A DNA stretch of 64,000 nucleotides from the NCBI RefSeq assembly GCF_000315625.1, contig NW_005434667.1:859061-923060 (forward strand). The letters are read 5' to 3'. Of this stretch, positions 17,785 through 42,724 are shown one piece after another; within the stretch, counting starts at the first letter, position 1; the number at the start of each line of letters is the position of its first letter. The translations under genes were made by a program, and so were the position numbers. The notes beneath the pieces were generated by a model. The model searched no databases. It was not told where the DNA came from and saw only the letters and a program-made list of their open reading frames with translations. The stretch is from Guillardia theta CCMP2712 (Eukaryota; Protista; Cryptophyta).

Positions 17785-17911
17785 GTGTCTCCACCCTGCC
17801 CCTTAATTAGAAATCGGTATATATATACCTAAAAAAATAAGACCCTCCCTGGAGACACACCTTCAACCCCCTATCATGTCCCCCCCCCCTACTTAGGGAG
17901 AGGTGGAGACA
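17785..17911. repeat. ~130-bp dispersed element, copy 3 (inverted)
   Basis: Reverse complement of 11737-11862. Confidence 0.92.
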
Positions 17912-18011
17912 TCATCAAAATTCTTACCGTCCTCATGTTAACTTTTTATTATTCATATTGAAATAAATACCATATCAATATAAGTATATCTTTCATATAT
18001 TCCAATAGCAA

Positions 18012-18986
18012 ATGATTGATCTATCTGTCCTACATGATGATATCTTGAATAACATCAAACATAAGTATAAGCTTGTCTCTAAATTGTACCAACTCATCTC
18101 CAACCATATCAGGTCTTTCAATAATCCCACTCACGCCATCCTCAATTATCTCTATTTCAGATATGATATATTAGATCCACATTACATCGAACTCTCCTTG
18201 CACGATCTTATTATCCTTACTATCCAATTCTCTTCAGACCTTACCTTTCTTTTTCCTGATTGGAAGTGTTTTGATCAGCCCCATCCTCTCCTTAAACAAC
18301 AAAAATCTAGAATTGTACTACTCAGACACACCCTCTATGGCCATATCAATGAGCTCTATCGGATACAATTCTGCTTCTTTAAGAAGTCTCATGATAGAAG
18401 ATTATGGGATTATTTTGAACTCTCTCAAGACCCATACATACAATCTCTCCCTTATAAACTATGGTTACCGGATAGTTGCTTCAAGTTCCATACATTCAAT
18501 CGTCTAGGTTATCGTGAGTTGTACATCCTTACTCGTAATGTTGATCTTGATACTATCAAGAGGGTTCATACTAAGAAACTCAAGAATGTCACTTACTTGC
18601 AGGATCAAGAAGAGTTCTTCATATATTGTGTATCCGACAAGGATGTCCATAAATATGGTTTCAAGCCTGTCCTATATGATGAAAAATACAAGGAGTGCAT
18701 CCTTTTGATATCTAAGAAGAACAAGTACAAGTTCTGGATTGAAGCCGATTTCTTTTTGGAACTATGGCTTCTGAGATCCTTTGAATTGACTTATGCTCAT
18801 TATCCTAGACAGAATGAAAAATTGAAATGCTATACCAAGATACATCCTGATATCTACTATGATATGGATCCTGAAATCAATCCTCTATTCTATGAATTCG
18901 ATATATGCAAGGAGGAGACCGCATATCAACACCTATGCATCTATGATCGATATCACGATTACTATCAACAGCATCATCTTACATAA
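18012..18986 (+). CDS. Hypothetical viral-like protein (324 aa), possible degenerate N-terminal F-box-like motif
   Basis: Long ATG-initiated ORF with N-terminus DLSVLHDDILNNI. Confidence 0.65.
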   Translation: MIDLSVLHDDILNNIKHKYKLVSKLYQLISNHIRSFNNPTHAILNYLYFRYDILDPHYIELSLHDLIILTIQFSSDLTFLFPDWKCFDQPHPLLKQQKSRIVLLRHTLYGHINELYRIQFCFFKKSHDRRLWDYFELSQDPYIQSLPYKLWLPDSCFKFHTFNRLGYRELYILTRNVDLDTIKRVHTKKLKNVTYLQDQEEFFIYCVSDKDVHKYGFKPVLYDEKYKECILLISKKNKYKFWIEADFFLELWLLRSFELTYAHYPRQNEKLKCYTKIHPDIYYDMDPEINPLFYEFDICKEETAYQHLCIYDRYHDYYQQHHLT

Positions 18987-19827: not shown

Positions 19828-21153
19828 CTAATCTCTATACTCAAATATTATTGGATTCGAGGATAAAAAATGCCAACGTATCTCTGACTTTCTCTCTCGC
19901 AATAAAAGTCTCACTCGAGGATTTGGATTGTTCGACAAATTCAGCATATAGATCTCTTTATTCGTCTTGTGCTCTATTAACCAATCTATCGCCTTGTCAT
20001 TCGGATTACAACACAATGCTCTCACATCTAAACGCCTATCGTTATTTAAAACAAAATCCACCGCTTCATCATTGCTATTTATACAAAAATTTATCCTATG
20101 GATATACTGTTGATTTCTTAGCAAAAATCTTACCGCTTCCGTATTCGTATTCATACTAAAAACACTTATAAATATCTTGCTCTCATTTCTTATCGTGAAT
20201 CTCACTGCCTCCGTATTCGTATTCTTACTGAAATTCATCCAATCTATCTTGCTTTCATTACCTATCATAAATCTCACTGCCGCATCCGATGGGTTCTTCG
20301 ATAATATCTTCCAATTCACCTCATTATGATCATCTATCTTATAATCTCTATCTCTATATGACTCTATTATCTTTATCGCTCTCTCATTCGTATTCCCTGA
20401 CAAGTACTCTAGATTTACATATCTATCGTCCCTCTCTAAATACTTATCAAATATCTCATCGTGGATACATTTCGATAAAACATCCGTCAATGGTAACATG
20501 CTCTTGCGCATCAATAATCTCAAACCTCTCACATTCTTGTTCTCTATCAAGTACTCCTCCACTATATACTCTGGATGCTTCCCCAAAAAATCTATCGCTG
20601 CATCACTCGGGTTCATATTTAGATTGCGCAATCCGGCACTCTGATCTCGTGGTTTAAATCTCAATAACTCCTCCAACTCTTCCTCAAAATGCTTCTCTAT
20701 CACGTTTATCATCCCCTCACTCGGATTCCCTAAAAGATCCACTAATATTAATTTCTCTGGATCTATCCAGTCCAACAATCTCGGTGGCATCATCCTCTTG
20801 TACTCTGTCACTATTCGCTCCTTCATCTCTGTTGGTAGCTTGCTCAATGATAATGTTAAGTTCTCCTTCCTAATTATCTTTCTATGTATCTCACTCGAGT
20901 TGTCCGACCCATTCTCGAATAGTATGCCTATGTTCCTACATAATGACCTCAGCTGTCTCTTGTTCATATCCATCAGCTTGATACATATCTTGAATGTTGT
21001 CTCATCCTCACATATATGGCTCAACTCCTCCCTCGTCAGTTTAAACAGTCTCACCCTCGATATCAACTCCTTATCAACATACTCTGTAGTCGGTTCTATT
21101 GCAATCAGTGATGACACCACATTTGCCTTCACCGGTGAATTACTCTTTGACAT
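19828..21153 (-). CDS. F-box-like plus (I/V)DWxxLSxNP repeat protein (paralog of 12485-13840)
   Basis: LSLSKLPTEMKERIVTEY; VNWKILSKNPS, IDWMNFSKNTN, IRWHFLSSNPIIF. Confidence 0.8.
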   Translation of the reverse strand: MSKSNSPVKANVVSSLIAIEPTTEYVDKELISRVRLFKLTREELSHICEDETTFKICIKLMDMNKRQLRSLCRNIGILFENGSDNSSEIHRKIIRKENLTLSLSKLPTEMKERIVTEYKRMMPPRLLDWIDPEKLILVDLLGNPSEGMINVIEKHFEEELEELLRFKPRDQSAGLRNLNMNPSDAAIDFLGKHPEYIVEEYLIENKNVRGLRLLMRKSMLPLTDVLSKCIHDEIFDKYLERDDRYVNLEYLSGNTNERAIKIIESYRDRDYKIDDHNEVNWKILSKNPSDAAVRFMIGNESKIDWMNFSKNTNTEAVRFTIRNESKIFISVFSMNTNTEAVRFLLRNQQYIHRINFCINSNDEAVDFVLNNDRRLDVRALCCNPNDKAIDWLIEHKTNKEIYMLNLSNNPNPRVRLLLRERKSEIRWHFLSSNPIIFEYRD

Positions 21154-21194
21154 TTACTCTTATCTTTTATCTACATTTTTACCTTAGAGTGAGC

Positions 21195-23494: not shown

Positions 23495-25648
23495 TTATAC
23501 AAATTGAAACTTGCTGATCTCCATGATCAATATAGCATCTAAGAACTTGAATACGATCTCATCAACATCCTTGTAATGCTCTGATAATTCCATTACCTGG
23601 CCACAAGTGTGTGCAACCGGGATATGGCCACTGTTGTTCATTGCCCTGACTGAATATTCAGACAACTGGTCAATAAGGATATAGCCTGAACCGGTCCAGA
23701 ACTCAAGGATGGCCTTAACAAAGTCCTCGTGCTGTGGCAATCCTTCTAGAAGCTTTGTCTTTGCTGGATCATTGTCTAACCTGATCCATTGTGCAAGCAG
23801 CCTCTTGTATACACGATTGGGCATAGATAACACCCTGTCGAATAGCTCCTTTATACCAGGTGAGACCATAACTACATTCTTATGGTCATAATACACTATC
23901 TTGGGTATCAAGATGCTTTTCACATTCCTCTTCACGCTCTCAACACGGGCCAGAACTCTTGCGAGACCGCTTATACCAATTTGCTTTTCAATAAAAAAGT
24001 TGCGTTTTGATATCCTCATACCACACAATATGTTCTTGTACATCTTGTTGATGTTGCTCTGCTTTGTGTAGGGGTCATACTCATAGATATCTATCATGCT
24101 CTCATCCACTATCTTCTTGATGCTAGTCCTCTCTCTATCAATGAGCCTCTTTATGTCCTTGTTGATGCCGAACTCCAGCAGGTAGAACATTAGGATGTCG
24201 TGGTACGACAGCGTTGTCTTCTTGTGGTCTTTCATCCACGATTCCGAGCTGTTAGAGAGCTCGAAGTGTTTTATGTATCTCTCTATATCATTGTAATCCT
24301 CAAGATAGCCATCCATGTTGTGCCTTGTTCTGGGCTTGATAGGCTTGTATATAAGGCCCGCTACATCCATGAGAGAGAGCCTTATATTTATGCCATTATT
24401 GTTGCGCAGGAGGAAAATAAGAATGGCACCAACAAATTTGTAATCATCATCAGCAAGGTCCCTCTTGAAGATGTATATGTTATTTCTATTGGACAACCTC
24501 TTGAGATACTTGGCCACGAATTGTTTGGATAATGATGTAAGGAACTGCCGAGTGAGCCCACCAGCGTCAACAGAGGTGTTGTGTCTTACACGTGCAATAT
24601 CAAAGTATATATCTTCTGGATTTCTTCTGAATAATCCCTCCATGTATTCAAGCTCGTTCATATCAGGGTCACGAATGTTTATGGTATTCGAATAGAAAAC
24701 CTTCCTGTTGAACATCTTAGTTATTGTATCATTGATTGGTTGAGACTCGTTTGTGAGATATGGGCATATGCTCTGCAACAATTGCTGCAAGGATTTGTTG
24801 TCGATGTGCCTCAATGCGTTAGAACACTTAGAGTTATTAAGGGGTGTGGGCTGCCTATCTCTGATGCTGCTGGATTTTGAGGATGGTGAGTTATTCGTGG
24901 AATTTCCCTTCGGAAAGAAATATGTTGTTATTGATCTTGCGTCCATTCTCTCTAACATTCTCTTGAGCTCTTGAAGGTCTTGGTTGGGGTCTGATGGCAT
25001 GAAGTTATCTTTCACATAACTCAGATCACCTTCTGACAGCCCACTATATAAGCTGTCAAAAGCACCCTCATACTTTATACGGAAAACTTCAGCAACATCT
25101 CTTATCTGATCATATTCTTCTTCTATTGAATCCGAGATCGGTGGATTGAATAGATTGTTCAACTTGTTCCAGAACCAAAAATTGCGAAGATTGAGTGGTG
25201 AATGTCTAATCTCAAAGAAATTGAAGACGATGTCATTCAACATGTCGTTGTCCTTGTCTGTATAATTCGGGATGCTTGGCAATCTCTGATATGCAATATG
25301 AGCCATGCTGGATATGAACCTGAAGATCTCATCATCCTTTTCCAACAAAAGCCGACGGTCTTCTACATTATCCACATTATTCAGAAAGTCTAAGAACTCA
25401 CGTATCTTAGGACCAATCTGATGATGATGGATATATACATAGCCAACCGCCATAAGGACAGTTCTATCATATCTTAGAATGTGACGGATAGTATCAGTAG
25501 AGATTTTTGCGAAACCTGCTAGAGGTCTTAGGTCAACATACTCCTCCTCATCACTTGATCCACTGGAACGATCTGTTCGGATATATCGCCTAGGCACATT
25601 CTGCATCAAGGAATTGTACTCATCCGCACTGATAGATCTGATGGACAT
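23495..25648 (-). CDS. HECT-domain E3 ubiquitin ligase
   Basis: VDAGGLTRQFL (HECT N-lobe), YKFVGAIL, ILEFWTGS, IPVAHTCGQVMEL (catalytic Cys motif) and a C-terminal Phe (FQFV). Confidence 0.85.
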   Translation of the reverse strand: MSIRSISADEYNSLMQNVPRRYIRTDRSSGSSDEEEYVDLRPLAGFAKISTDTIRHILRYDRTVLMAVGYVYIHHHQIGPKIREFLDFLNNVDNVEDRRLLLEKDDEIFRFISSMAHIAYQRLPSIPNYTDKDNDMLNDIVFNFFEIRHSPLNLRNFWFWNKLNNLFNPPISDSIEEEYDQIRDVAEVFRIKYEGAFDSLYSGLSEGDLSYVKDNFMPSDPNQDLQELKRMLERMDARSITTYFFPKGNSTNNSPSSKSSSIRDRQPTPLNNSKCSNALRHIDNKSLQQLLQSICPYLTNESQPINDTITKMFNRKVFYSNTINIRDPDMNELEYMEGLFRRNPEDIYFDIARVRHNTSVDAGGLTRQFLTSLSKQFVAKYLKRLSNRNNIYIFKRDLADDDYKFVGAILIFLLRNNNGINIRLSLMDVAGLIYKPIKPRTRHNMDGYLEDYNDIERYIKHFELSNSSESWMKDHKKTTLSYHDILMFYLLEFGINKDIKRLIDRERTSIKKIVDESMIDIYEYDPYTKQSNINKMYKNILCGMRISKRNFFIEKQIGISGLARVLARVESVKRNVKSILIPKIVYYDHKNVVMVSPGIKELFDRVLSMPNRVYKRLLAQWIRLDNDPAKTKLLEGLPQHEDFVKAILEFWTGSGYILIDQLSEYSVRAMNNSGHIPVAHTCGQVMELSEHYKDVDEIVFKFLDAILIMEISKFQFV

Positions 25649-26914: not shown

Positions 26915-28483
26915 TTAAGGCACAAATATTGCCGGGTTCTGCAATAGCCTATCCCAATCAACCATATACACCCTCTCTCCATTTCTATAGAAGAATTGGT
27001 GATGTTGCAATTCATCTATTATCCTCTCTGATGGATTTTCACACAGACCTTTCACAAACCTTATCTTTTCATCAGTATTTTCTTTATAATGAGTCTTCAA
27101 TCTATCCAATAACATATCTACAGCTATCCAGTGTGGATTCTTTATGATAAAGAACAATGGTTCTTTCTCATAACTGTAGGTGTATCTCTTGATCATATAA
27201 ATATTATCCTTAAAGAATTTCATCGCGGTCTCATTGTTCAATTTACCAAGGTGATGTAAGAATGACATATTATCACTATTATTCTTCTGCATATTCTTAT
27301 CAATCATATATTTTATTTTATGATTATCATTATACATCTTGATCAATAGTTGTGTAGCCTTCTCATTCTTATTCTTGCACAAATATATTAATTGCATCTC
27401 TTCATCTATCTCTGGAAACAATCCGAATGCCTCTATATTTGGGTTCATAAAGATCGTATATTTAGTATTATGTCTATGCTTTTTCATTAACTGGATTGCT
27501 ATCTCACTTGGATTTGCACAGAGTCTATACCAATCTATATCATACTCATTCCCATTCACCAGCAACAATCTAAGAAGCTCCTCATGTGGGCTTGATGAGA
27601 TAGCTTTTACATTCAGATTTGCCTTGATTTCATCAATCCTGTGTATGATCTTCACTATATTTGGATTAGGATTATTGAATATTTTGAGATCAATCCGGGT
27701 TTGGTTATCATATCCAATGTTCTTGTATCTGACCTTATCCTTATCATAACAGGTATTCAGTTCTCTAATGTGCTTGTTCAAGAATTTCAATGCAGCAGGA
27801 TTTGGATTGCCGCAAAGATTGATCAAAGTATCTTCTTGTGAAGTAAGTTGTGAATGCCAATATTTCTCTATCAGCTTTATTGCTTTTGAATTATTATGCT
27901 TTGCCAACATTTCAAAATCAAGAGTATCTATTGAGAGCAGGTTCTTCTTTATCAAGCAATGCAGATACTCAATTGCACCAGTGCTGCTATTATTACAAAG
28001 GATTTTGTACTTGTTTTGATCATTGTTGTTGAATATGACATCCTTATCGATCCAATCACGCAATTTATATGAATATACATCCTCAATCTTAGCAAATATC
28101 AATTCTTGTACGTCGTCCGGAAGATGGATAAACCTCGGTGATGCTCTGCTTGCTGAAGGCAACTTAGATGATGTATCCTGCTTGCTTTGCAATTTCTCCA
28201 TTGACATAATCTCAAGCCTGCTCTTCATCTGCCTCAATATCTTTTGGAGTTTTGGTTCTGTTGTATTGAATTTTTTTGCATATGATTGCAATTCTTTCTC
28301 ATCTGCTAAGATCCTTTCTATTTTTCTAAGGTTTGAATTCTTGACAAATCTGTAAAAACTGTTGCTTGGATAGATGTCTGATATATCATATCTCATAAGG
28401 GTCAGTTCTGCCCCTCGTTTGAATGGCGCATCAAAATCAGATATTGCAGATATAGATGATGTCTTGCTTGCTGATGGCAACAT
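26915..28483 (-). CDS. F-box-like plus DWxxLxxNP repeat protein (probable start MLPSAS)
   Basis: FIHLPDDVQELIFAKI (F-box-like), YKLRDWIDKD, IDWYRLCANP, VDWDRLLQNPAIF. Confidence 0.8.
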   Translation of the reverse strand: MLPSASKTSSISAISDFDAPFKRGAELTLMRYDISDIYPSNSFYRFVKNSNLRKIERILADEKELQSYAKKFNTTEPKLQKILRQMKSRLEIMSMEKLQSKQDTSSKLPSASRASPRFIHLPDDVQELIFAKIEDVYSYKLRDWIDKDVIFNNNDQNKYKILCNNSSTGAIEYLHCLIKKNLLSIDTLDFEMLAKHNNSKAIKLIEKYWHSQLTSQEDTLINLCGNPNPAALKFLNKHIRELNTCYDKDKVRYKNIGYDNQTRIDLKIFNNPNPNIVKIIHRIDEIKANLNVKAISSSPHEELLRLLLVNGNEYDIDWYRLCANPSEIAIQLMKKHRHNTKYTIFMNPNIEAFGLFPEIDEEMQLIYLCKNKNEKATQLLIKMYNDNHKIKYMIDKNMQKNNSDNMSFLHHLGKLNNETAMKFFKDNIYMIKRYTYSYEKEPLFFIIKNPHWIAVDMLLDRLKTHYKENTDEKIRFVKGLCENPSERIIDELQHHQFFYRNGERVYMVDWDRLLQNPAIFVP

Positions 28484-28627
28484 TTTTACTTTAATACCAT
28501 AAAATATATACCCTCTAGATGGAAAAGATCTGACTTTATTTGTAAGAACACTAATCCTACTTTTTGTATGAATAATATACATCTAATATCAAAAATGAAG
28601 CCAGCACATCAGTATGGTCATCAAGGC

Positions 28628-29329: not shown

Positions 29330-30262
29330 ATGTACTCACTGAACTACATCTTGAAACTTGCTCTTAGATTGAGCAAGATCATCATTGCCGATGATTCTGA
29401 TGAACAAGAATTGCTTATCGAGAAACTTGAAAATGCACTCTCCAATAAACATAATATCTTGAATGTGCATAAGCAAGTGACAAAGGACAATCGATTGTAC
29501 GATCTGAGGGATTTGAAGGAAATATTGCGTAAATGCAACAACATTCTCAAGATAAAAAATTGTGCAAATAAACTGAAAGAAAGAATAATACAGAACCCAT
29601 TGTTCTCATTCTTGGATGATTCAAAGATCAATGATAAATGCAAGACCTTGTTCTCAAATATAGAACTCATAGCCAAAGAGTTCTATACATATCAAGAGCT
29701 CATAATTTCATTATCAAAATGCATAATTCTAATGTCAAATAGATTGAATGACATGCCATATGAGGGTAAAAATAGAACACTATTGACAGAATTTATGGAA
29801 CCGATTGCAGATGCGTATCATATGTTGAACCTCTGCATCAATTCAATGAATATCAAACAGATCAACTTCAATATGTATGAATACAAACGCTTTGTGTTTC
29901 ATGCCGCAAATGCATTTGATTGTTATCATTATCTTGATGATTATGCAGAATACAATGAAACAGTCAAAAAGAATAAGAATCAAGCAACATTTGTAAAGAT
30001 TTACTTTGAAGTTCCAGATATATCAAATATCTCTGAATTGCAACTATTTAAAACAATATCAAAAACTGTTAAAAATTATGATTATGACTATGACTATGAT
30101 CCTGATTATAATTCTGATGAGGATGGTAACAATGAGGATGGAGATGATGAGGAGGATGAGGATGGGTATGGGGATGGAGATGTGGATGATGATATTGAAT
30201 ATACAAGTGAAATTGAATCTGATGATGTTAGAGGCAGTGATGATGAAGAGATAGATGCATAA
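29330..30262 (+). CDS. Hypothetical protein with acidic C-terminal tail
   Basis: 310-aa ORF with upstream AAAAATGA. Confidence 0.75.
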   Translation: MYSLNYILKLALRLSKIIIADDSDEQELLIEKLENALSNKHNILNVHKQVTKDNRLYDLRDLKEILRKCNNILKIKNCANKLKERIIQNPLFSFLDDSKINDKCKTLFSNIELIAKEFYTYQELIISLSKCIILMSNRLNDMPYEGKNRTLLTEFMEPIADAYHMLNLCINSMNIKQINFNMYEYKRFVFHAANAFDCYHYLDDYAEYNETVKKNKNQATFVKIYFEVPDISNISELQLFKTISKTVKNYDYDYDYDPDYNSDEDGNNEDGDDEEDEDGYGDGDVDDDIEYTSEIESDDVRGSDDEEIDA

Positions 30263-33050: not shown

Positions 33051-33749
33051 ATGGCATTGAAAGATGCTCTTATCACGTCGAATAAGGAGGATTTTAGTGA
33101 GGGGATCTTTGGACAATTCTTGACATGGTTGCTTGAGATATTGAATCATATGGTAACATCTAATATAATTGATGATGAAACTAGGATATATTTTGATATT
33201 CACACATTGGAGTATGATAATATCATTCCTTTAATTATAGTTCCTCACAAGCATTATTTATTGCCAGCAACCGATATACATAGAATAGATGTGTCAAGCT
33301 ACAAGATAGCCAATGATTGTGAATTCCCTTTCTGTGAGGAAAGCTTCTATACAGCAAATCATATTTTTAATAAGTTCTTTGATTTCTCAGATTCTATTAA
33401 AACAAATATACCATCTATAGATCGCTCAACATCGGTTGGAATCCATTTTCGTGGATCGGATAAAAATTTTGATATAGGTCAGGCAAATCCTATATCAGAT
33501 GAAGAATTCATTCTAATTGTTCAAGATTTTCTTAACAAGAATAGTAAAATTAGATGCATATACTGTTGTAGTGATGAGCAACTGTTCATAAACAAGATGT
33601 TAGATCGATTTGGAGCATCCTATGATGTTTTGCAGTATCAGCAGAAACAAGCAAACAATACCAACAGAATGGGGTTCTTTAGATGTGCTAAATCACTCCC
33701 TAAAGAACAAAGGGATTCATACATATCTCAAACCACTCTTCCTCAGTAA
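33051..33749 (+). CDS. NodZ/GT23-type fucosyltransferase-like protein, probably 3'-truncated
   Basis: SVGIHFRGSDK (motif I) and IYCCSDE (motif II). Motif III is not visible, and the tail overlaps a convergent ORF. Confidence 0.65.
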   Translation: MALKDALITSNKEDFSEGIFGQFLTWLLEILNHMVTSNIIDDETRIYFDIHTLEYDNIIPLIIVPHKHYLLPATDIHRIDVSSYKIANDCEFPFCEESFYTANHIFNKFFDFSDSIKTNIPSIDRSTSVGIHFRGSDKNFDIGQANPISDEEFILIVQDFLNKNSKIRCIYCCSDEQLFINKMLDRFGASYDVLQYQQKQANNTNRMGFFRCAKSLPKEQRDSYISQTTLPQ

Positions 33750-34253
33750 ATGAGTATGCACATTTATCTATGATAATATTGAGCAAGCCCTCATTCATCG
33801 TGTCAAGCAAATTGAATTGTGTGCGCTCCAGCTTATCTGATATATGTGTCACATTCTCTTGAATGAACTTCAAATATCTCTTAAGATCTAATCTATTGAG
33901 AAAATTGTTTATGTCCAAAGGGCTTGTGATGTGGCATTTAGATATATCAAGCAAATCCACAGCATCAGGATTTTTGTTAAACCATATAGAATCGTGCACA
34001 ATCTTTTCTGGATAGGCCTTCAGAATATCTAACGCATTCTCATTCTTTGATAACTCACTCCAATAAACATTGGACAGGTTGTCTCTCAAGATATCGATAG
34101 CACCCTTGTTTGCTGAAAGCACCTTCCAATCAATCTCACCCAAATTATCCTTCAACAATTCAATTGCATCTTCATCATCCTTTGCTGAAAGCACAGACCA
34201 ATCTATAATATCAAACCTGTGCTTGATGATCTTAGCATATATCTTAGTGCTCT
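33700..34253 (-). pseudogene. 3' part of an IDWxxLSxN repeat-protein gene interrupted by the Fanzor transposon
   Basis: IDWSVLSAK, IDWKVLSANK and VYWSELSKNE repeats. Joins 37526-37730 in frame (VEFNAL-KSTKIYAK) to give a 252-aa protein. Confidence 0.88.
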
Positions 34254-34331
34254 TAGAGTTGTTTGCGTTTTTATGTTGGGAAGCGAAGCTTGCCACAGGC
34301 AACACTTATTTTTGTACTTGAATATGTAAGG

Positions 34332-35392
34332 ATGTATTCTAGAACTTATCCGGCTGGAGAGGTTATCAAGGCTCTTGAAGTTTATAACAATGTAAAGAGT
34401 CTTTCTCTCAAACTTTCATTGAAGTTTGAGAGTGGAAGGCTTCATACATCACCGGCATTAGCAAATCCACCATTCAGAGATGGTGGTCAAACCTTAGAAT
34501 GACTATCAGACGCAAAGACAAACGCAAACGACGTTTCAAGCGCCGTCATAAATATCCTCATCTAAATGATGTCATAAAGCACCTCTTCTATCAAAACAAA
34601 GACATCGCCTTCATGCATCTAAAGCAAATCCAATATACGTTGAACCTATCTTATGACATCTCTCCATCATTGACATCTCTTTATCGAGTCCTAAAACAAT
34701 CTAAGATATCAAGGCGTCGCGACTTTGTCGCTTTTTGCCGACCGCCAAAGGCGGAGGCAAATCGCTTCAGCATCCACCATATCAATCCAACAAATCCAAG
34801 TGATAGAAAGGCCAGGTTTTCAGACTTCAAGGCCTCGATAGATCCATTATTGAACGACAATATCGTTTGTCTGGATGAGACCTCATTCTGCAATGTTGGC
34901 AACCCTTTTTATGGCTACTTCCCCAAGGGAAGACAACCCAACGCAATCAAGGTATCAAAACGTGAAAGAGTATCATTGGTCATGGCTGTTCACTCTTCTA
35001 TTGGCATTGTTTCTTACAACCGTGTAAACAAGGCCTTTACAAAGGCTTCATTCTTAGTTTTTTTATAGGGTCTTATTCCTAAGCTTCCTAAGAGCACAAA
35101 AGCCATCCTTATGGATAATGTGGCCTTCCATAGGTCTAAGGAGGTTGTTGGCTTGTTGGAACGGCATAAGCTTGTTCCTCTTTATATCCCTCCGTACTCG
35201 CCAAGATGCAACCCCATTGAGGAGGTCTTCTCTCTGTTGAAGAGAGCCTTCCGAACCAAGACAACAAAGAAGTGTCTGGCAGACCGTATTGAAGAGGCAA
35301 TCGACATCATAAAAGGATATAAGGATTTGGATCTTAATTATAAGCATACAAGAGACTATGTTAGAGCGGAATGTCAAACATTAGGATTGTAA
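34332..35392 (+). pseudogene. IS630/Tc1-like DD34E transposase, inactivated
   Basis: HTH (KASYITGISKSTIQRW), LDETSF, MDNVAFH and PPYSPRCNPIEEVFS, with 34 residues between the second D and E. Frameshift at a hairpin (34404-34432) and an in-frame TAG at 35066-35068. Confidence 0.9.
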
Positions 35393-37443
35393 AACGAAAG
35401 GCGAAGGGCTTCTTCAAGTGTGAGGACCTAGTCACAATCAAGGATGCTGTCAAGGCAGCTCATAGGATCATGTCAGATGCGTCCATACTCGTCCGGTCAT
35501 ATTATCTGCGATGGTTCCAGAGCTCATATCCCCTTGATTCAGATGACAAGGAACTTGAGCTTGAGCACTTCCATATATCCATGGCCTGCAGCATAGTCCA
35601 GGGTATAACAAGGCCTCCAGTCCGTGGTGTTGGTCCTGAACAATCTGTCAAGATAGACGTCTTCAATGACATGTTAGATGAGTATAAGAGGCTGTACGAG
35701 CGTGCTCCAAATGATAAAGAGAACGAAACGGACCTCTCTCTATCGCATGTCTTAGCATATTCCATCGACAACCTTCTTACCGCGTATAAAAACAACATCG
35801 AAGCCCATTTCTCAAAATATGTCAAACGCTTCATCCGATGTGATATGTTGGCTAAGGGCTTCAATAAGTCTGAGGCAAACAGAGTGGCGGCAATATATAC
35901 CAATGCCTATATTTATGACTCATCCCTCGACCTGGAACCAGACTTTATGGAAAGATTAGGCCTTGAGGCAACAAGTTATTCATCTCTATTCCCCTCTAAG
36001 ATAAATAAGGGCGGTTTTCCAAGGGTCTATGACCTGAAGGCCAACCCTTGGGTCTATCTTCCAAAGATGGTCATGATAAATCAGGCCTTAGAGACAGACT
36101 TCTCTTCTGTAGAGCATAAGGAGAGGAGGCTGCTCAATCCACTGCCCTTCTATTCATCGTTTGTTCCGATGCACATACGGATTGATACATCCGGCTTATC
36201 GCAGCTGCTGATGACTAAGGATAGGCTTGATGATTTCAAGAGATCTTATCTTGCTGAGTTTGGAGTAAGTCTAAATATAAAGAACAAGGGTGATATGCTA
36301 GCAAGTTTTGAGAAGATCTTTGGCCGGAAGGCAACATCCAATAGAGAGGCCGGATTGTATGCAACAGAGATGTGGAGCTTCTTGACAAACCTGAAGACAT
36401 GCCGTCAATGGAAGGAGCTTGATGGGGTTGTTCGTAAGAACGATCCCAAGGGAACACAATGGATGTTTGACAATGCTGTTGTAACGGACGGTGTTTCAAT
36501 CTCATTCCAGGTGATCGATAACAGCATGTTTGGACGGAAGGCCTTCTCTGGCAGGAAGAAGAGGGTAGCATGTCAGGAGGCCAATGATGAAGAAGATAGC
36601 AAGCAGGTAACAAGAGAAGAGCTAAAGACATCGAAGCTCTTGGGATGTGACCCTGGGAAGAGAGACATCCTAGCAATAACAGATGGCATAAAGACTATCT
36701 GTTACACCAAGGGGCAGAGAGACATGGACACGCATAAGACAATAAGGTTGAGAACCAGTCTGAAGAGGCGCCGAGGCTGCGGCCTAGAGGAGTATGAGAC
36801 ACAGGTGATGAACCGGTTCCAGAAACGGTCATGCCATCCTGAGATGTTTCGACGCTATGCCTGTTCCAGGAAGAGGATGGAACACATGCTGCTTGAATGT
36901 TATTCTCATCCAGTCTTTAGAGAGTTCAAATTCTTGGTTTACAACAAGACTAAGAGCTCCGAACATAGGTTCATGCATAGGGTGTTGGAAACATTCAAAC
37001 GGCCGCAAACAAACCTGAGCAAGGCGAGGTGTGCGTCAGGAGTTATGCGTATGAATGCCTTGAAGGAGGTCCAAAGGCATGGAGATATCATTATAGGGTG
37101 GGGCAACTGGGGAAAGAATCCAAACGCGCTACGATGCTCGGCAGGACCAACCCCAGGCATTGGAATAAGGAGAAGGTTTGAATCGCTGTTCAAAACAACA
37201 ACAGTGCCAGAACACTACACCTCCCAAGAATGTCCGAGTTGTAAGGGACGATGCCTAAGAAAGGCAACTGGCAACCCGATCATGAGACACCATCTGCTTC
37301 GTTGTACAAACGATAGTTGCTGTAGCAGGTGGTGGAATCGGAATGTAGCCGGGGCGTTCAACATCCTAACAAGGCTGTTGGATGGACAAACACTATCCGG
37401 TAACGAAACTACCGGAGACGGGTTAGGAGGTGACGACCTCTAA
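35371..37443 (+). CDS. Fz1: Fanzor1 RNA-guided DNA endonuclease (eukaryotic TnpB/Cas12 homolog), 690 aa
   Basis: TDGVSIS (WED), LLGCDPGKRDI (RuvC-I), IIIGWGNWG (Gly at the canonical Glu position), VPEHYTSQECPSC (shifted Glu and Zn finger), LLRC..C..WNRNVAGAFNI (RuvC-III with Asn). Located in a mariner-type element. Confidence 0.95.
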   Translation: MSNIRIVKRKAKGFFKCEDLVTIKDAVKAAHRIMSDASILVRSYYLRWFQSSYPLDSDDKELELEHFHISMACSIVQGITRPPVRGVGPEQSVKIDVFNDMLDEYKRLYERAPNDKENETDLSLSHVLAYSIDNLLTAYKNNIEAHFSKYVKRFIRCDMLAKGFNKSEANRVAAIYTNAYIYDSSLDLEPDFMERLGLEATSYSSLFPSKINKGGFPRVYDLKANPWVYLPKMVMINQALETDFSSVEHKERRLLNPLPFYSSFVPMHIRIDTSGLSQLLMTKDRLDDFKRSYLAEFGVSLNIKNKGDMLASFEKIFGRKATSNREAGLYATEMWSFLTNLKTCRQWKELDGVVRKNDPKGTQWMFDNAVVTDGVSISFQVIDNSMFGRKAFSGRKKRVACQEANDEEDSKQVTREELKTSKLLGCDPGKRDILAITDGIKTICYTKGQRDMDTHKTIRLRTSLKRRRGCGLEEYETQVMNRFQKRSCHPEMFRRYACSRKRMEHMLLECYSHPVFREFKFLVYNKTKSSEHRFMHRVLETFKRPQTNLSKARCASGVMRMNALKEVQRHGDIIIGWGNWGKNPNALRCSAGPTPGIGIRRRFESLFKTTTVPEHYTSQECPSCKGRCLRKATGNPIMRHHLLRCTNDSCCSRWWNRNVAGAFNILTRLLDGQTLSGNETTGDGLGGDDL

Positions 37444-37549
37444 AACCTAGAACTTAGAGTGCAAAAACGCCATTACGATTGTGATGCCTATTCAAGGGTG
37501 TCCCAAGTGTAAAAAGAAAGCACTCTAAGAGCATTAAACTCTACTCTGT
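37391..37549 (+). ncRNA. Predicted Fanzor omegaRNA: scaffold ~37391-37529 overlapping the ORF end, guide ~37530-37549 from flanking DNA
   Basis: Hairpins TCCGGTA/TACCGGA (37396-37416) and GGTT..GAGGT/ACCTC..AACC (37421-37447). Long-range stem CTTAGAGTGC (37453-37462) / GCACTCTAAG (37520-37529) closes at the element end. Exact RNA ends are inferred. Confidence 0.75.
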
Positions 37550-37730
37550 CAATGTTCTCAATAAGGATGTCTGAAGCGTTCTCATTGCATGATAGATTGT
37601 TCCAAGCCTTGTCGGTCATCTCATCGATTTTTATATTTATGATTTTCATAGCAGTCGGATTATTATTCAAACAAAGACCTTCTATGTCAAGTTTGCTCTC
37701 ATCAACCCATGGTAATAGTCTATAAGACAT
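37526..37730 (-). pseudogene. 5' part of the repeat-protein gene interrupted by the transposon
   Basis: MSYRLLPWVDESKL matches the paralog N-terminus MEDYKLLPWINVDDL (25839). Continues in frame at 34253 once the element is removed. Confidence 0.88.
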
Positions 37731-37776: not shown

Positions 37777-40608
37777 TTGATATTATTTTTACCTATATTT
37801 TATCTTGATGCTCATGTAAAAAAATTCTTGGATAGAAATACTATAATTTTAGATAGCATACAATCACTAGAGGTGGAAAATGATTGCATGTTACTTCATA
37901 CTTTCAAGCAGTGCGCATCACAGGAAATTCAAAGCTTTATGGTCGATTCCTCTAATAATATTCAGTATAATACTCTCCTTAAGCTAAGCAATGAAGAAGC
38001 ATCATCTCAACAGCTTTTGGAAGCATCTCAACAATCTTCAGAAGTATCTCAACAAGAGCAGGCTCCATCCTCAACAAAGAAGACAGCTAAGAAGATCCAG
38101 CAACAACACCAGGCTCCATCCCCAACAAAGAAGACAGCTAAGAAGATCCAGCAACAACACCAGGCTCCATCCTCAACAAAGAAGACAGCTAAGAAGATCC
38201 AGCAACAACACCAGGCTCCATCCTCAACAAAGAAGACAGCTAAGAAGATCCAGCAACAACACCAGGCTCCATCCCCAACCAAGAAGACATCTAAGAAGAT
38301 CCAGCAACAACACCAGGCTCCATCCCCAACCACGAAGACAGCTAAGAAGATCCAGCAACAACAGCAGGCTCCATCCCCAACCAAGAAGACATCTAAGAAG
38401 ATCCAGCAACAACACCAGGCTCCATCCCCAACCACGAAGATAGCTAAGAAGATCCAGCAACAACAGCAGGCTCCATCCCCAACCACGAAGACAGCTAAGA
38501 AGATCCAGCAACAACAGCAGGCTCCATCCCCAACCAAGAAGACATCTAAGAAGATCCAGCAAGAACAACAAGAGCAGGCTCCATCCTCAACCACTATGAT
38601 AGCTAGGACGATGCAGCAATCAGAGATTTTACCTGAAATGCTACAAAATTCTTCAAAACTACCTACAAAAGATACAAGAAAGAGAAAAGCTCGAACATAT
38701 ATTCTACAACACAAATATGATAAGCATCCGCAACAAAAAGTTGATAAGGCTAGGATAACTCTTCCTAAGACAAAACAAAAAAAGGTTGATGATGAAAAGC
38801 AAAAGGAACAGGGTGAAGAAGAAAAGGAGGAAGAAGGAGAGCAGGATGAAGAGGAAGCAGAAGATGATGAGGAAGCAGAAGAGGATCAGGAAGATAGTCA
38901 AGAGGAGGAGGAACAAGGAGACCAGGATGAGGAAGAAGAAGCAGAAGAGGATCAGGAAGATAGTCAAGAGGAGGAGGAACAAGGAGACCAGGATGAGGAA
39001 GATAGTCAAGAGGAGGAAGAAGAAGGACAGCAGGATGATGATGAAGAAGAGGAGCAAGATGATGAGGAAGCAGAAGAGGATCAGGAAGATAGTCAAGAGG
39101 AGGAAGAAGAAGGACAGCAGGATGATGAAGAAGAAGAGGATCAGGAAGATAGTCAAGAGGAGGAAGCAGAGGAGGATCAGGAAGATAGTCAAGAAGAGGA
39201 GGAACAAGGAGACCAGGATCAGGAAGATAGTCAAGAGGAGGAAGAAGAAGGACAGCAGGATGATGATGAAGAAGAGGAGCAAGATGATGAGGAAGCAGAA
39301 GAGGATCAGGAAGATAGTCAAGAGGAGGAGGAACAAGGAGAGCAGGATGAGGAAGAAGAGGAGGATCAGGATGATGAGGAAGCAGAAGAGGATCAGGAAG
39401 ATAGTCGAGAGGAGGAGGAACAAGGAGAGCAGGATGAGGAAGAAGAGGAGGATCAGGATGATAGTCAAGAGGAGGAGGAACAAGGAGAGCAGGATGAGAA
39501 GGAAGCAGAAGAGGATCAGGAAGATACTCAAGAGGAGGAGGAACAAGGAGAGCAGGATGAGGAGGAAGCAGAAGAGGATCAGGAAGATAGTCAAGAGGAG
39601 GAGGAACAAGGAGAGCAGGATGAGGAGGATGAGGATGAGGATGAAGATGAGGATGAGGATGAGGATGAGGATGAGGATGAGGATGAGGATGAGGATGAGG
39701 ATGAGGATGAGGATGAGGATGAGGAAGACGATGAGGATGAGGATGAGGATGAGGAAGACATTCGTAAAATCTTAAGGAAGCGCAGAAAGTTAAACCTTAA
39801 GGAGGAAGCTGAATACAAACAGAGAATTGCAAAAATACGGGGTTCTCTATCAAGAGAACAATATGCCTCTAAACATGTTGGAAAATATCATGTGATAAAG
39901 TTGCAATCGAGGAGAGACAAGGAATTGATTGTTATTAAATCAAAAAAGACAGGAACAAAACACAAGGTCAATCTCCTTGATGGATTTGGTGTTCAACACA
40001 TAGGCCCTTCAAGATCCTTAGGCAAGCATAAGCTTGGAGTGTTTGAATGTGGCATGGAAAATAAGAGTGATAGTACAGTTTATAACAAGAACAATGATCA
40101 AACATATATTACAGGAGGGATTGAGGAGCTTGAATATTTCGCAAATAACAAGGATGTAATATATCCTACAGATAAAGATGATATAGCATTTGACAGCAGG
40201 AATGGGATCGATACAACAAAGGTATTATGCAGAAACATCCCAGTGACATTGGATGACATTCTTGCTTACTTCAAGTCTTATGTGAATAGCAATGTATTTA
40301 TGCAAGGTCTTGTATATTCCGTACATTCTACCTTTTCTGAGGTTAAAAGATTTGTTCGTCGCAAACATGAGAGATACATAACATTTCCAATCACATTCAT
40401 TGATGTCATGACAGATGAGAATGAGAAATTTGTTTTCAAGGCACTGCTGTGGAAGAAGAAGAAGAATTCTAGATATCTTGGTGCAAGGGCAGGTTTTCTC
40501 TTACCAGTATTGTTCATAGTATTGGATTTAGAGGGATTTGTGACATTGTCGAGGATCTGGGATATGTCATCATCTGTGATGGTGAGTGTTTCTTCAAAGT
40601 CATTCTGA
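37777..40608 (+). CDS. Low-complexity protein: 17-aa QQQHQAPSPTKKTAKKI repeats, a very long Asp/Glu tract and a C-terminal globular region; start uncertain, last ~45 aa probably read-through
   Basis: Open 943-codon frame; 51-bp tandem repeats at 38058-38590; acidic repeats at 38790-39760. Confidence 0.65.
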   Translation: MILFLPIFYLDAHVKKFLDRNTIILDSIQSLEVENDCMLLHTFKQCASQEIQSFMVDSSNNIQYNTLLKLSNEEASSQQLLEASQQSSEVSQQEQAPSSTKKTAKKIQQQHQAPSPTKKTAKKIQQQHQAPSSTKKTAKKIQQQHQAPSSTKKTAKKIQQQHQAPSPTKKTSKKIQQQHQAPSPTTKTAKKIQQQQQAPSPTKKTSKKIQQQHQAPSPTTKIAKKIQQQQQAPSPTTKTAKKIQQQQQAPSPTKKTSKKIQQEQQEQAPSSTTMIARTMQQSEILPEMLQNSSKLPTKDTRKRKARTYILQHKYDKHPQQKVDKARITLPKTKQKKVDDEKQKEQGEEEKEEEGEQDEEEAEDDEEAEEDQEDSQEEEEQGDQDEEEEAEEDQEDSQEEEEQGDQDEEDSQEEEEEGQQDDDEEEEQDDEEAEEDQEDSQEEEEEGQQDDEEEEDQEDSQEEEAEEDQEDSQEEEEQGDQDQEDSQEEEEEGQQDDDEEEEQDDEEAEEDQEDSQEEEEQGEQDEEEEEDQDDEEAEEDQEDSREEEEQGEQDEEEEEDQDDSQEEEEQGEQDEKEAEEDQEDTQEEEEQGEQDEEEAEEDQEDSQEEEEQGEQDEEDEDEDEDEDEDEDEDEDEDEDEDEDEDEDEDEEDDEDEDEDEEDIRKILRKRRKLNLKEEAEYKQRIAKIRGSLSREQYASKHVGKYHVIKLQSRRDKELIVIKSKKTGTKHKVNLLDGFGVQHIGPSRSLGKHKLGVFECGMENKSDSTVYNKNNDQTYITGGIEELEYFANNKDVIYPTDKDDIAFDSRNGIDTTKVLCRNIPVTLDDILAYFKSYVNSNVFMQGLVYSVHSTFSEVKRFVRRKHERYITFPITFIDVMTDENEKFVFKALLWKKKKNSRYLGARAGFLLPVLFIVLDLEGFVTLSRIWDMSSSVMVSVSSKSF
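38058..38590 (+). repeat. 51-bp coding tandem repeat, ~10 copies
   Basis: CAGGCTCCATCC(T/C)CAAC(A/C)A(A/C)GAAGACA(G/T)CTAAGAAGATCCAGCAACAACA(C/G) units. Confidence 0.95.
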
Positions 40609-40974: not shown

Positions 40975-41681
40975 ATGATGATGGCGCTGACTGGTCCTCC
41001 TCGCCCCTTCGCTGCCTGCACCCAGTGCCGTCGCCGCAAGACTCGCTGTGACGAGCAGCTTCCTTGCACCCGCTGCCTCCAGGCCGGACGCGGCGATGAC
41101 TGCTCTCGACCAGAGGCTGGTGATGCCGCGCTCGGGACCCCAACGGCATCACGTGGGCTTCGCCGCAGGTCGAGCAAGGCCTGCCTGGGCTGCCAGCTCA
41201 AGAAAGTCCGCTGCGGGGAAGCGCGGCCCTGCGTACGCTGCTGCCGGACAGGGTCCGTGTGCTACGAGGAAGGGGGGCTTCCTCTGGGAGTGGACTTGCA
41301 GGTGTATCAGCGGAGGCGAGAGCAGGTGACCCAAGCGTGCGAGCGCTGCAGGAGGTCGCGACTCAAGTGCGACGCCGAGAGGCCTTGCGGGCGATGCGTC
41401 AGGTCAGGCCAGACGTGTCTGGACGGACGGAGGCGGAGGGGAGGAACTGGGCGATTGGGGATGAAGAGGCAGCAGAGGCCCAGAGCTGCTGGACATTGAA
41501 CGAGCTCGTCAGCCCAGACAGCATGCCGGGAGTGTACCTGACGGAGGGGCCCTGGGGCGAAGAGGAAGAGCAAGATGGATTCCCTCTAGGAGGGTACCTC
41601 CTGTCACCGAGCACGGAGGAGGAGGTCACCTGGGAGAGGCCGGAGAGGCAGGACGATCCTTCACCTTTGTTTGATTGGTAG
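40975..41681 (+). pseudogene. Triple Zn(II)2Cys6 transcription-factor copy with a frameshift near 41430-41460
   Basis: Three CxxCxxxKxxCxxxxPCxxC clusters. The C-terminus equivalent to the intact copy lies in another frame (ORF 41259-41681). Confidence 0.75.
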
Positions 41682-42016
41682 CAGGGAGATCTCTGGTGGG
41701 GAAGGAGAGTTTGATCCTAGCTCTGCGACTGCAGCCTTTGCTAATGATGCATGCCTGATCAACGATCATTTTAATGAAAGGAAACATCCATTTCTATCAC
41801 TGCGCCTTCCAGCTACGCGAGAAAGAATATTCTTGTCCACCAGCCCACCCACTTCTTCACTCAGAGTGGCGATTGTCTTACAGCCTCCTGCTGCCTATTT
41901 CACGACAATTCTGCTCAACCTGATCCTGCTGCCTATTTCACGACAATTCTGCTCAACCTGATCACAACCTTGCTTTATTCCTAGTCCCTCAAGCACTCCT
42001 CCATCCAGCCCTCCTC

Positions 42017-42724
42017 CTACCAAGCAAACAAAGGTGAAGGATCGTCCTGCCTCTCCGGCCTCTCCCAGGTGACCTCCTCCTCCGTGCTCGGTGACAGGAG
42101 GTACCCTCCTAGAGGGAATCCATCTTGCTCTTCCTCTTCGCCCCAGGGCCCCTCCGTCAGGTACACTCCCGGCATGCTGTCTGGGCTGACGAGCTCGTTC
42201 AATGTCCAGCAGCTCTGGGCCTCTGCTGCCTCTTCATCCCCCATCGCCCCGCTCCTCCGCCTCCGCCTCCGTCCGTCCAGACACGTCTGGCCTGACCTGA
42301 CGCATCGCCCGCAAGGCCTCTCGGCGTCGCACTTGAGTCGCGACCTCCTGCAGCGCTCGCACGCTTGGGTCACCTGCTCTCGCCTCCGCTGATACACCTG
42401 CAAGTCCACTCCCAGAGGAAGCCCCCCTTCCTCGTAGCACACGGACCCTGTCCGGCAGCAGCGTACGCAGGGCCGCGCTTCCCCGCAGCGGACTTTCTTG
42501 AGCTGGCAGCCCAGGCAGGCCTTGCTCGACCTGCGGCGAAGCCCACGTGATGCCGTTGGGGTCCCGAGCGCGGCATCACCAGCCTCTGGTCGAGAGCAGT
42601 CATCGCCGCGTCCGGCCTGGAGGCAGCGGGTGCAAGGAAGCTGCTCGTCACAGCGAGTCTTGCGGCGACGGCACTGGGTGCAGGCAGCGAAGGGGCGAGG
42701 AGGACTTGTTTGGGTACCCGCCAT
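42017..42724 (-). CDS. Triple Zn(II)2Cys6 (GAL4-like) binuclear-cluster transcription factor
   Basis: ACTQCRRRKTRCDEQLPCTRC, ACLGCQLKKVRCGEARPCVRC and ACERCRRSRLKCDAERPCGRC, followed by an acidic tail. Confidence 0.88.
   Translation of the reverse strand: MAGTQTSPPRPFAACTQCRRRKTRCDEQLPCTRCLQAGRGDDCSRPEAGDAALGTPTASRGLRRRSSKACLGCQLKKVRCGEARPCVRCCRTGSVCYEEGGLPLGVDLQVYQRRREQVTQACERCRRSRLKCDAERPCGRCVRSGQTCLDGRRRRRRSGAMGDEEAAEAQSCWTLNELVSPDSMPGVYLTEGPWGEEEEQDGFPLGGYLLSPSTEEEVTWERPERQDDPSPLFAW

What the first reader, a model, noticed from the sequence alone, without database searches (positions are those of the whole stretch)
34254..37549. Complete eukaryotic RNA-guided nuclease system: Fanzor1 + omegaRNA inside an IS630/Tc1-mariner transposon
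Seen: a 690-aa ORF with TnpB/Cas12-type RuvC and zinc-finger motifs overlaps by 22 nt the end of a DD34E transposase. Both lie between TA duplications and imperfect inverted ends, and structured RNA-like stems occupy the last ~135 nt. Established: Fanzors are eukaryotic TnpB homologs guided by an RNA from the transposon right end, with the guide taken from flanking DNA. Inference: this is a programmable DNA endonuclease locus. From memory it closely resembles the characterised Guillardia theta GtFz1, so the family is known. The transposase is dead but the nuclease frame is intact.
Basis: partly seen in the sequence, partly recalled or inferred. Interest (0 to 1): 0.92.

Follow-up and report, generated by a model that had tools for sequence, protein, structure and literature searches.

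The report
Published GtFz1 Fanzor locus, transposon-borne
This is the already published and structurally solved Guillardia theta Fanzor1 (GtFz1) RNA-guided nuclease locus; the only addition is that it does sit inside a decayed IS630/Tc1-type transposon, which the original paper said it could not see.

Summary
The 690-aa ORF (35371-37443) is 100% identical to G. theta Fanzor1 in PDB 9CER/9CES/9CET. The window is G. theta CCMP2712 scaffold_7 (window position + 859060). The published omegaRNA scaffold is window 37391-37529, the native guide starts at 37530, and the TAM is 5'-TTAAN.

New here is the transposon anatomy. Saito et al. 2023 wrote that this locus "seems to lack IRs" and has no clear transposase association. 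Comparison with twelve related insertions and an uninterrupted G. theta paralogue of the disrupted host gene fixes the element at 34256-37525 (3270 bp). It has a TA duplication (34254-55, 37526-27) and imperfect ~26-nt inverted ends. Its DD34E IS630-type transposase is broken by a 29-nt hairpin insertion and a TAG, and also carries a 45-nt in-frame insertion. Intact autonomous relatives exist in metagenomes.

Unoccupied target sites read T|TA|A, which is the TAM. The occupied right junction reads C|TA|A, so it lacks the TAM. This fits homing into empty sites, which is inferred and not shown.

The element lies in a low-GC, probably virus-derived island.

The parts
34254..34255 (.). Left copy of the TA target-site duplication. 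The preceding flank base is T (34253).
   Evidence: Homology with the second G. theta copy starts at 34253. The paralogue shows the empty site.
34256..34281 (+). Left terminal inverted repeat, GAGTTGTTTGCGTTTTTATGTTGGGA.
   Evidence: Conserved at the left ends of L002, L004, L007, L008, L011 and L014.
34333..35392 (+). IS630/Tc1-type DD34E transposase pseudogene. Lesions: a 29-nt perfect-hairpin insertion at 34404-34432 (frameshift), a 45-nt in-frame insertion at 34717-34761, and a TAG at 35066-35068. The catalytic D, D and E residues are still readable.
   Evidence: Pfam DDE_3. tblastn against the intact 324-aa L004 transposase. Three-way alignment with gap list. Insertion sequences printed.
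35371..37443 (+). GtFz1 (Fanzor1) ORF, 690 aa, locus tag GUITHDRAFT_101477. RuvC residues D427, E614 and non-canonical N658; zinc-ribbon cysteines from C621.
   Evidence: 100% identity to PDB 9CER/9CES/9CET. Published functional residues R85, S123, H126, Y130, Q278, F392 and N658 are all present (PMC11423790 read).
37391..37529 (+). omegaRNA scaffold, 139 nt, overlapping the last 17 codons of the ORF. It contains the right inverted repeat, the right TA and the two bases AG.
   Evidence: Identical to the 'GtFz1 omegaRNA scaffold' in the Saito 2023 supplement. Fold z = -6.2. Conserved in six loci up to ...CTCTAA, then divergent.
37501..37525 (+). Right terminal inverted repeat, TCCCAAGTGTAAAAAGAAAGCACTC.
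   Evidence: Conserved in all related insertions.
37526..37527 (.). Right copy of the TA target-site duplication.
37528..37529 (+). First two flank bases, AG. The A is invariant at all 12 junctions and completes the TTAA of the empty site. The G is the variable N of the TAM TTAAN.
   Evidence: Junction comparison. TAM from PMC10432273.
37530..37549 (+). Native guide, AGCATTAAACTCTACTCTGT, which is host-gene flank. The published RNA-seq span reaches 37543.
   Evidence: Saito 2023 Supplementary Table. Unique in the window at up to 3 mismatches.
37528..37730 (-). N-terminal piece of the disrupted host gene, a WxxLSxNxxA-repeat protein.
   Evidence: Alignment with uninterrupted paralogue GUITHDRAFT_149032.
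33700..34253 (-). C-terminal piece of the same disrupted host gene.
   Evidence: Removing 34256-37527 gives ...ENIDRVEFNAL|KSTKIYAKII..., gap-free against the paralogue's ...ENIDRVDFNAL|KNTKIYAKIV...

Best explanation
This is the published GtFz1 locus of Guillardia theta CCMP2712.

Anatomy (shown here): a 3270-bp IS630/Tc1-mariner-type DNA transposon (34256-37525) has inserted at a T|TA|A site inside a repeat-protein gene of a low-GC island. The insertion duplicated the TA. The element carries two genes in an overlapping arrangement: a now-dead DD34E transposase and an intact Fanzor1 nuclease.

Biochemistry (shown by others for this exact protein and RNA): the last 50 nt of the nuclease ORF, the right inverted repeat, the right TA and two flank bases are transcribed as a 139-nt omegaRNA scaffold. 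The transcript continues into the flank, which supplies the guide. The RNP cuts dsDNA that carries 5'-TTAAN followed by a guide match.

Inferred from the anatomy:
- TTAA is exactly what an unoccupied insertion site reads: flank T, then TA, then flank A.
- The occupied right junction reads C-TA-A and the left junction reads T-TA-G. The element is therefore blind to itself.
- It should also be blind to classical Tc1-type excision footprints.
- It can cut an empty copy of its own site, for example an unoccupied allele or a co-infecting viral genome. Repair from the occupied copy would then copy the element in, which is homing.

In G. theta both copies have lost their transposase but kept the nuclease ORF.
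For: Identity:
- 100% identity to PDB 9CER/9CES/9CET.
- The contig is JH992971.1 of assembly GCA_000315625.1.
- The published scaffold, RNA-seq span and TAM map to 37391-37529, 37391-37543 and TTAAN.

Boundaries:
- blastn homology with three other copies ends at 34253 and 37528-37531.
- Junction prints agree.
- The uninterrupted paralogue is colinear with the in-silico empty site.

Target rule:
- 12 of 12 right junctions read RE|TA|A|N with N variable.
- 6 of 7 left flanks read T|TA.
- The register matches the TAM assay exactly: guide base 1 is 37530.

Transposase family:
- DDE_3.
- IS630 equivalog at 137.8 bits against a cut-off of 100 on the intact L004 orthologue.
- DD34E spacing.
- Autonomous relatives with intact transposase and Fanzor genes exist in L004 and L011.

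Nuclease retained:
- Both G. theta Fz ORFs are intact, while each transposase carries its own lesions.
- Fz dN/dS is about 0.15.

Self-immunity: the paper shows that every base of TTAA is required.
Against: - Homing has not been observed.
- The native guide has no second match in the window.
- The one paralogous site examined reads TTTAG rather than TTAAG and matches only 15 of 20 guide bases. No present-day target is documented.
- The low dN/dS may be a legacy of history before integration. The dead transposase also shows dN/dS of about 0.2.
- GtFz1 gave no detectable indels in human cells.
- One left flank (L004) reads A|TA, not T|TA.
- Expression of the protein or RNA in G. theta itself was not examined here.
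Confidence: 0.85

Rival explanations
1. Inert relic. Both G. theta copies are recently endogenised viral passengers. The nuclease ORF is intact only because it is young, and nothing is expressed or active in the alga.
For: - The transposase is dead in both copies.
- There are only two copies in the genome.
- No other guide target exists in the window, and the paralogue site lacks the TAM.
- dN/dS of about 0.2 in a clearly dead gene shows that such ratios are inherited signal.
Against: - The 1-kb transposase carries three lesions in the window copy and two in the scaffold_348 copy, yet the 2.07-kb nuclease ORF has none in either.
- At equal lesion rates, two clean Fz ORFs would be very unlikely. 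This is my estimate, not a formal test.
- The recombinant protein and RNA from this very sequence are active in vitro.
Confidence: 0.3
2. Domesticated host nuclease. G. theta keeps the Fanzor gene for a cellular function unrelated to transposon spread. Saito et al. suggested this for loci that seemed to lack inverted repeats and a transposase.
For: - The Saito 2023 Discussion raises the idea.
- The nuclease ORFs are kept while the transposases decay.
Against: - The premise fails: inverted ends, TA duplication and a transposase remnant are all present.
- The gene sits inside a disrupted gene in a low-GC island.
- It has no introns.
- Its guide is simply its own insertion flank.
- Close relatives are mobile in metagenomes and giant-virus-like contigs.
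Confidence: 0.07
3. Alternative boundaries. The element would span 34247-37534, with TA at 34245-46 and 37535-36. This is suggested by the best inverted repeat found in the window alone.
For: Inverted repeat I4 matches 18 of 21 positions. Removal of this span also keeps the host frame, by my reading.
Against: - Homology with four other copies stops at 34256 and 37525.
- The paralogue contains the six residues NALKNT, corresponding to NALKST here, which this model would delete.
- The published scaffold and guide register fits only the 34256-37525 model.
Confidence: 0.01

Closest known systems
GtFz1, Guillardia theta Fanzor1 (Saito et al. 2023, Nature, PMC10432273; Xu et al. 2024, Cell, PMC11423790; PDB 9CER/9CES/9CET)
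   Same: It is the same locus. The protein is identical, the omegaRNA scaffold is identical (37391-37529), the scaffold is NW_005434667, and the TAM is TTAAN. The non-canonical RuvC triad with N658 is present.
   Different: There is no difference in sequence. The published annotation (Supplementary Data 3) marks no inverted repeats and no transposase, and the Discussion says none were evident. Both are present, with a TA duplication.
Fanzor1-carrying Mariner/Tc1 elements of Bao and Jurka 2013 (PMC3627910), e.g. PGv-1 in Phaeocystis globosa virus and PUl-1
   Same: A mariner-type transposase plus a Fanzor1 gene lie between inverted ends with TA duplications. The elements are often virus-borne and often chimeric.
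   Different: G. theta is not mentioned in that paper. This copy has a dead transposase. Sequence relationship to PGv-1 was not tested here.
TnpB/omegaRNA of IS200/IS605 (ISDra2)
   Same: The guide RNA is made from the transposon right end. The TAM equals the transposon's target motif. The donor junction lacks the TAM. A homing or retention role has been proposed.
   Different: The carrier here is a DDE cut-and-paste element that makes a TA duplication. The 3' duplicate is therefore inside the scaffold. Excision would leave footprints rather than a clean empty site.
SpuFz1 (Spizellomyces punctatus Fanzor1, PDB 8GKH)
   Same: Same family and architecture. 'Ghost' omegaRNA-only loci are known for it, and ghost derivatives of the GtFz1-type element occur in IMG/VR contigs.
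   Different: Only a weak sequence match, E = 8e-4. It has a different TAM (CATA) and a canonical D in the third RuvC position.

Membership tests
Fanzor1 (eukaryotic TnpB-like RNA-guided nuclease) | Split RuvC domain with a catalytic triad | tested here: met
   Identical to the solved GtFz1 structure. D427, E614 and N658 are present. N658 is the published non-canonical third residue.
Fanzor1 (eukaryotic TnpB-like RNA-guided nuclease) | C-terminal zinc-ribbon (TNB / OrfB_Zn_ribbon) domain | tested here: met
   Pfam Cas12f1-like_TNB scores 23.4 bits, below the 26.3 cut-off. NCBIfam guided_TnpB scores 21.7 bits, below 100. The profiles alone are therefore sub-threshold. Membership rests on 100% identity to the structure, in which the TNB domain is resolved.
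Fanzor1 (eukaryotic TnpB-like RNA-guided nuclease) | omegaRNA encoded at the 3' end of the ORF and the right transposon end, with the guide taken from the flank | tested here: met
   The sequence equals the published scaffold and RNA-seq span. Fold z = -6.2. Conservation stops exactly after RE|TA|A.
Fanzor1 (eukaryotic TnpB-like RNA-guided nuclease) | Guide- and TAM-dependent dsDNA cleavage | not testable with these tools
   Published for this exact protein and RNA (PMC10432273 and PMC11423790).
IS630/Tc1-mariner DNA transposon | DDE transposase of the IS630/Tc1 type (DD34E) | tested here: met
   The window copy is in pieces: DDE_3 at 27.4 and 50.7 bits. The intact orthologue L004 scores 137.8 bits on NCBIfam IS630 against a cut-off of 100. 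The D-34-E spacing was read directly.
IS630/Tc1-mariner DNA transposon | TA target-site duplication | tested here: met
   TA lies on both sides of the element. A single TA is implied at the empty site by colinearity with the paralogue. The same holds at 12 related right junctions.
IS630/Tc1-mariner DNA transposon | Terminal inverted repeats | tested here: met
   34256-34281 against 37501-37525, about 20 of 27 aligned positions. Both ends are conserved across copies.
IS630/Tc1-mariner DNA transposon | Capacity to transpose autonomously | tested here: not met
   The window copy has a frameshift and a stop. It is a non-autonomous, decayed member of the family. Intact relatives exist in L004 and L011.

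The most novel reading that the evidence does not exclude
The primary paper stated that the GtFz1 locus lacks inverted repeats and a transposase. On this reading it is instead a virus-borne IS630/Tc1-type transposon whose T|TA|A insertion signature is the nuclease's TTAA TAM. The nuclease would then act as a homing endonuclease for empty sites in populations of large algal viruses or virus-like elements. It would be selectively retained after the transposase dies, with miniature omegaRNA-only 'ghost' derivatives supplying extra guides.
Probability: 0.4. Interest if true: 0.45.

Novelty: already known. Interest (0 to 1): 0.22.

Why it matters
As a discovery it does not matter. The nuclease, its RNA, its TAM, its cleavage pattern and three cryo-EM structures are already published for this exact sequence.

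The modest value is corrective.
- One of the four founding Fanzor loci was used to argue that Fanzors may have functions unlinked to transposons, because no inverted repeats or transposase were seen. The locus does have both.
- Its TAM and guide register fall out of the TA-duplicating insertion chemistry. This supports a unified transposon-homing view of DDE-associated Fanzors.
- It also gives a concrete, cheap test: empty site versus occupied junction versus footprint.

Tried and rejected
- Boundary model 34247-37534 came from the best in-window inverted repeat. It was rejected by cross-copy alignment and by the paralogue.
- The shared TAG in both G. theta transposases looked like an ancestral inactivation. 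That conflicted with dN/dS of about 0.2. It was resolved as a ~300-nt tract of 98-99% identity, a gene-conversion tract, at 34854-35154.
- A protein-pattern scan of IMG/VR with GtFz1 found nothing. A DNA-motif scan of the right end did find three viral-contig loci.
- PDB sequence searches with island ORFs 26915-28582, 15459-17243 and 23495-25648 gave nothing useful.
- The helicase-like ORF has homologues only in Hanusia phi transcripts. The island's viral identity therefore stays unproven.
- Rfam has no family matching anywhere in the window.
- A search for a second guide target or a second omegaRNA in the window found none.
- Covariation support for the omegaRNA is thin, with 2 compensatory pairs among 6 close sequences. 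I rely on the published cryo-EM structure instead.
- Structure prediction was not run, because the protein is identical to a solved structure.
Full report
**Observation.** The ORF list shows the 690-aa ORF at 35371-37443 (+). A 93-aa ORF ending at 35392 overlaps it by 22 nt. Pfam finds DDE_3 in two separate pieces (34499-35065 and 35111-35389). It also finds a weak Cas12f1-like TNB zinc ribbon at residues 610-665 of the long ORF. The sequence around both ends shows TA dinucleotides and inverted similarity.

**Identity.**
- A sequence search of the PDB gives 100% identity over residues 2-690 to "Guillardia theta Fanzor1", fused to MBP in 9CER/9CES/9CET. The next hit is SpuFz1 at E = 8e-4.
- An exact-protein look-up places the gene on JH992971.1 of GCA_000315625.1, G. 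theta CCMP2712. Window position + 859060 gives the scaffold position.
- The supplement of Saito et al. 2023 (PMC10432273) lists this locus as FZID83 on NW_005434667. Its omegaRNA span 896451-896603 is window 37391-37543. Its "omegaRNA scaffold" string is window 37391-37529. Its TAM is TTAAN.
- The main texts report several results for this protein: omegaRNA pull-down, TAM- and guide-dependent dsDNA cleavage, a 17-codon overlap of RNA and ORF, and no detectable indels in human cells. They also report a non-canonical RuvC triad with N658 and three cryo-EM structures.
- All published functional residues are present.

**What the literature did not have.**
- Their GenBank file for the locus annotates only the gene, "fz" and two "wrna" features at the left side.
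- Bao and Jurka 2013 described Fanzor1 in Mariner elements with TA duplications, some of them virus-borne, but do not mention Guillardia.
- Jiang et al. 2023 list Mariner/Tc1 among associated families.
- A 2026 review states in general that the 5' duplication is part of the TAM and the 3' duplication lies inside the Fanzor1 scaffold. It does not discuss GtFz1.

**Boundaries.** Two models kept the host reading frame, so I used other copies to decide between them.
- A homologue search found 92 relatives. I fetched the second G. theta copy (L002, scaffold_348, 85% aa) and metagenome copies L003 (93% aa), L004 (68%), L007/L008, L009, L011 and L012. I also fetched L005/L006 (47% aa) from an NCLDV-like contig.
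- blastn homology ends at window 34253 and 37528-37531.
- Printed junctions read flank-T|TA|GAGT... on the left and ...GCACTC|TA|A|N-flank on the right.
- The flanking minus-strand ORFs are two halves of one WxxLSxNxxA-repeat gene.
- Its uninterrupted G. theta paralogue GUITHDRAFT_149032 reads ...ENIDRVDFNAL KNTKIYAKIV... The two window pieces read ...ENIDRVEFNAL and KSTKIYAKII....
- The in-silico empty site aligns to the paralogue DNA without a gap.
- The element is therefore 34256-37525 (3270 bp), with TA at 34254-55 and 37526-27. The inverted ends are 34256-34281 and 37501-37525.
The right one (37549) includes AG plus the 20-nt guide.

**Transposase.**
- tblastn with the intact 324-aa L004 transposase and a three-way alignment show three lesions in the window copy: a 29-nt perfect-hairpin insertion at 34404-34432 (frameshift), a 45-nt in-frame insertion at 34717-34761, and a TAG at 35066-68.
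- The DD34E spacing is directly readable.
- The L004 protein passes NCBIfam's IS630 equivalog, 137.8 bits against a cut-off of 100.
- L004 and L011 carry intact transposase plus Fanzor genes, so autonomous relatives exist.
- The TAG is shared with L002. That seemed at odds with dN/dS of about 0.2 between the two copies.
- Sliding identity shows a ~300-nt tract (34854-35154) at 98-99% identity, within elements that are otherwise 64-91% identical. This indicates gene conversion between the two G. theta copies.
- Synonymous divergence is 0.19 in the transposase part and 0.58 in the Fanzor part, so the elements are mosaics.

**Nuclease and RNA.**
- Both G. theta Fanzor ORFs are intact, with dN/dS of about 0.15. 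That ratio may be inherited signal.
- The asymmetry between a clean 2-kb ORF and a multiply broken 1-kb ORF, seen in two copies, suggests that the nuclease was retained.
- The scaffold folds at -49.1 kcal/mol, z = -6.2.
- Its closing stem pairs CUUAGAGUGC (37453-62) with GCACUCUAAG (37520-29). That stem includes the right end, the TA and the AG.
- Six loci align with strong conservation up to ...CTCTAA and none afterwards.

**Mechanism.**
- At 12 of 12 right junctions the flank begins with A followed by a variable base.
- At 6 of 7 left junctions the flank ends in T.
- An empty site therefore reads T-TA-A-N, which is the TTAAN TAM. Guide base 1 (37530) is in exactly the register of the published assay.
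- The occupied right junction reads C-TA-A-G. The paper shows that every base of TTAA is needed. The element should therefore not cut itself, nor Tc1-type footprints that retain the terminal C.
- I infer homing into unoccupied sites. This is not shown.
- The native guide has no other match in the window.
- The paralogue site reads TTTAG with 15 of 20 guide matches.

**Context.**
- The element (GC 0.446) lies in a low-GC island (0.35-0.39, roughly 8-40 kb) between host-like DNA of GC 0.54.
- The second copy also sits in low-GC DNA.
- The right flank of L003 is 92% identical to window 29579-29867. An environmental relative of this island therefore carries the same transposon family 4.7 kb away.
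- IMG/VR contigs of 94 and 68 kb encode RNase HII, dCMP deaminase and a PP-loop ATPase. They carry miniature omegaRNA-only derivatives.
- L005 is NCLDV-like, with Erv1/Alr, dUTPase, SNF2 and a PARP_regulatory domain.
- The island's own identity was not resolved.

**Verdict.** The system is already known. The transposon anatomy and the equivalence of TAM and target site at this particular locus are a small corrective addition.

Noticed in passing
window 8000-40000: A low-GC island (0.34-0.39, against 0.53 on both sides) with densely packed ORFs that read through without introns. It includes a helicase-like ORF (15459-17243; ResIII, Herpes_ori_bp and CyRepA1-like matches) whose only homologues are Hanusia phi transcripts. 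It also includes a GT25 glycosyltransferase (13864-14628). It is probably integrated viral or mobile DNA, but no capsid or other hallmark gene was found.
   Followed up: partly
window 29576-29867 and L003:2835-3125: The right flank of metagenome contig L003 is 92% identical to this stretch of ORF 29330-30262. That contig carries the same transposon family with 93% aa identity in Fanzor and an intact transposase C-terminus. A close environmental relative of the island therefore carries the transposon at a different site. The window holds that site unoccupied, reading TGAAA where TTAAG is expected.
   Followed up: partly
window 34854-35154 and L002: A ~300-nt tract is 98-99% identical between the two G. 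theta copies, which are otherwise 64-91% identical. The tract carries the shared TAG stop. This indicates ectopic gene conversion. Synonymous divergence is 0.19 in the transposase and 0.58 in the Fanzor gene.
   Followed up: yes
window 34404-34432: A 29-nt insertion forms a perfect 9-bp hairpin (CTCAAACTT...AAGTTTGAG) and causes the transposase frameshift. It is absent from L002 and L004. Saito 2023 Supplementary Data 3 annotates it as 'wrna complement'.
   Followed up: partly
window 34247-34255 and 37526-37534: The target site is a 16-bp near-palindrome, GTGCTCT-TA-AGAGCAT. It extends the apparent inverted repeat 7 nt into the flanks. Other insertions show only T-TA-A. This is either chance (about 1 in 1000) or target choice.
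   Followed up: partly
L013, L014 and L015 (IMG/VR contigs of 94 kb and 68 kb): Miniature derivatives of the element occur in giant-virus-like contigs. One is about 846 bp and keeps both ends, the last 51 codons of Fanzor and the omegaRNA. One is about 120 bp. One shows a right end only. All are followed by TA-A-A. These are 'ghost' guide loci.
   Followed up: partly
window 9863-10032, 11712-11923 and 17724-17919: Three copies of a repeat of about 150-200 nt at 96-99% identity. Two are direct and flank ORF 10088-11671 (CoiA_N / DUF5710 zinc-ribbon protein). One is inverted. This may be a separate small mobile unit.
   Followed up: no
window 12458-13589 and 20055-21180: Inverted paralogous arms of about 1.1 kb (73-82% complementary) bracket the helicase-like gene. 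They correspond to ORFs 12485-13840 (+) and 19828-21153 (-).
   Followed up: no
window 40994-41685 and 42013-42705: A 98% inverted repeat with arms of about 700 nt and a 327-nt spacer, just outside the low-GC island.
   Followed up: no
window 37777-40608: A long ORF next to the insertion is built from tandem repeats. There are ten 51-nt units (37948-38661) encoding QQHQAPSPTKKTAKKIQ, followed by an acidic E/D-rich array of about 1 kb.
   Followed up: no
window 17892-18979 and L010:11795-12875: This island segment is 95% identical to G. theta scaffold JH993231.1, which also holds the uninterrupted paralogue of the disrupted gene. Related island DNA is therefore present more than once in the genome.
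   Followed up: no
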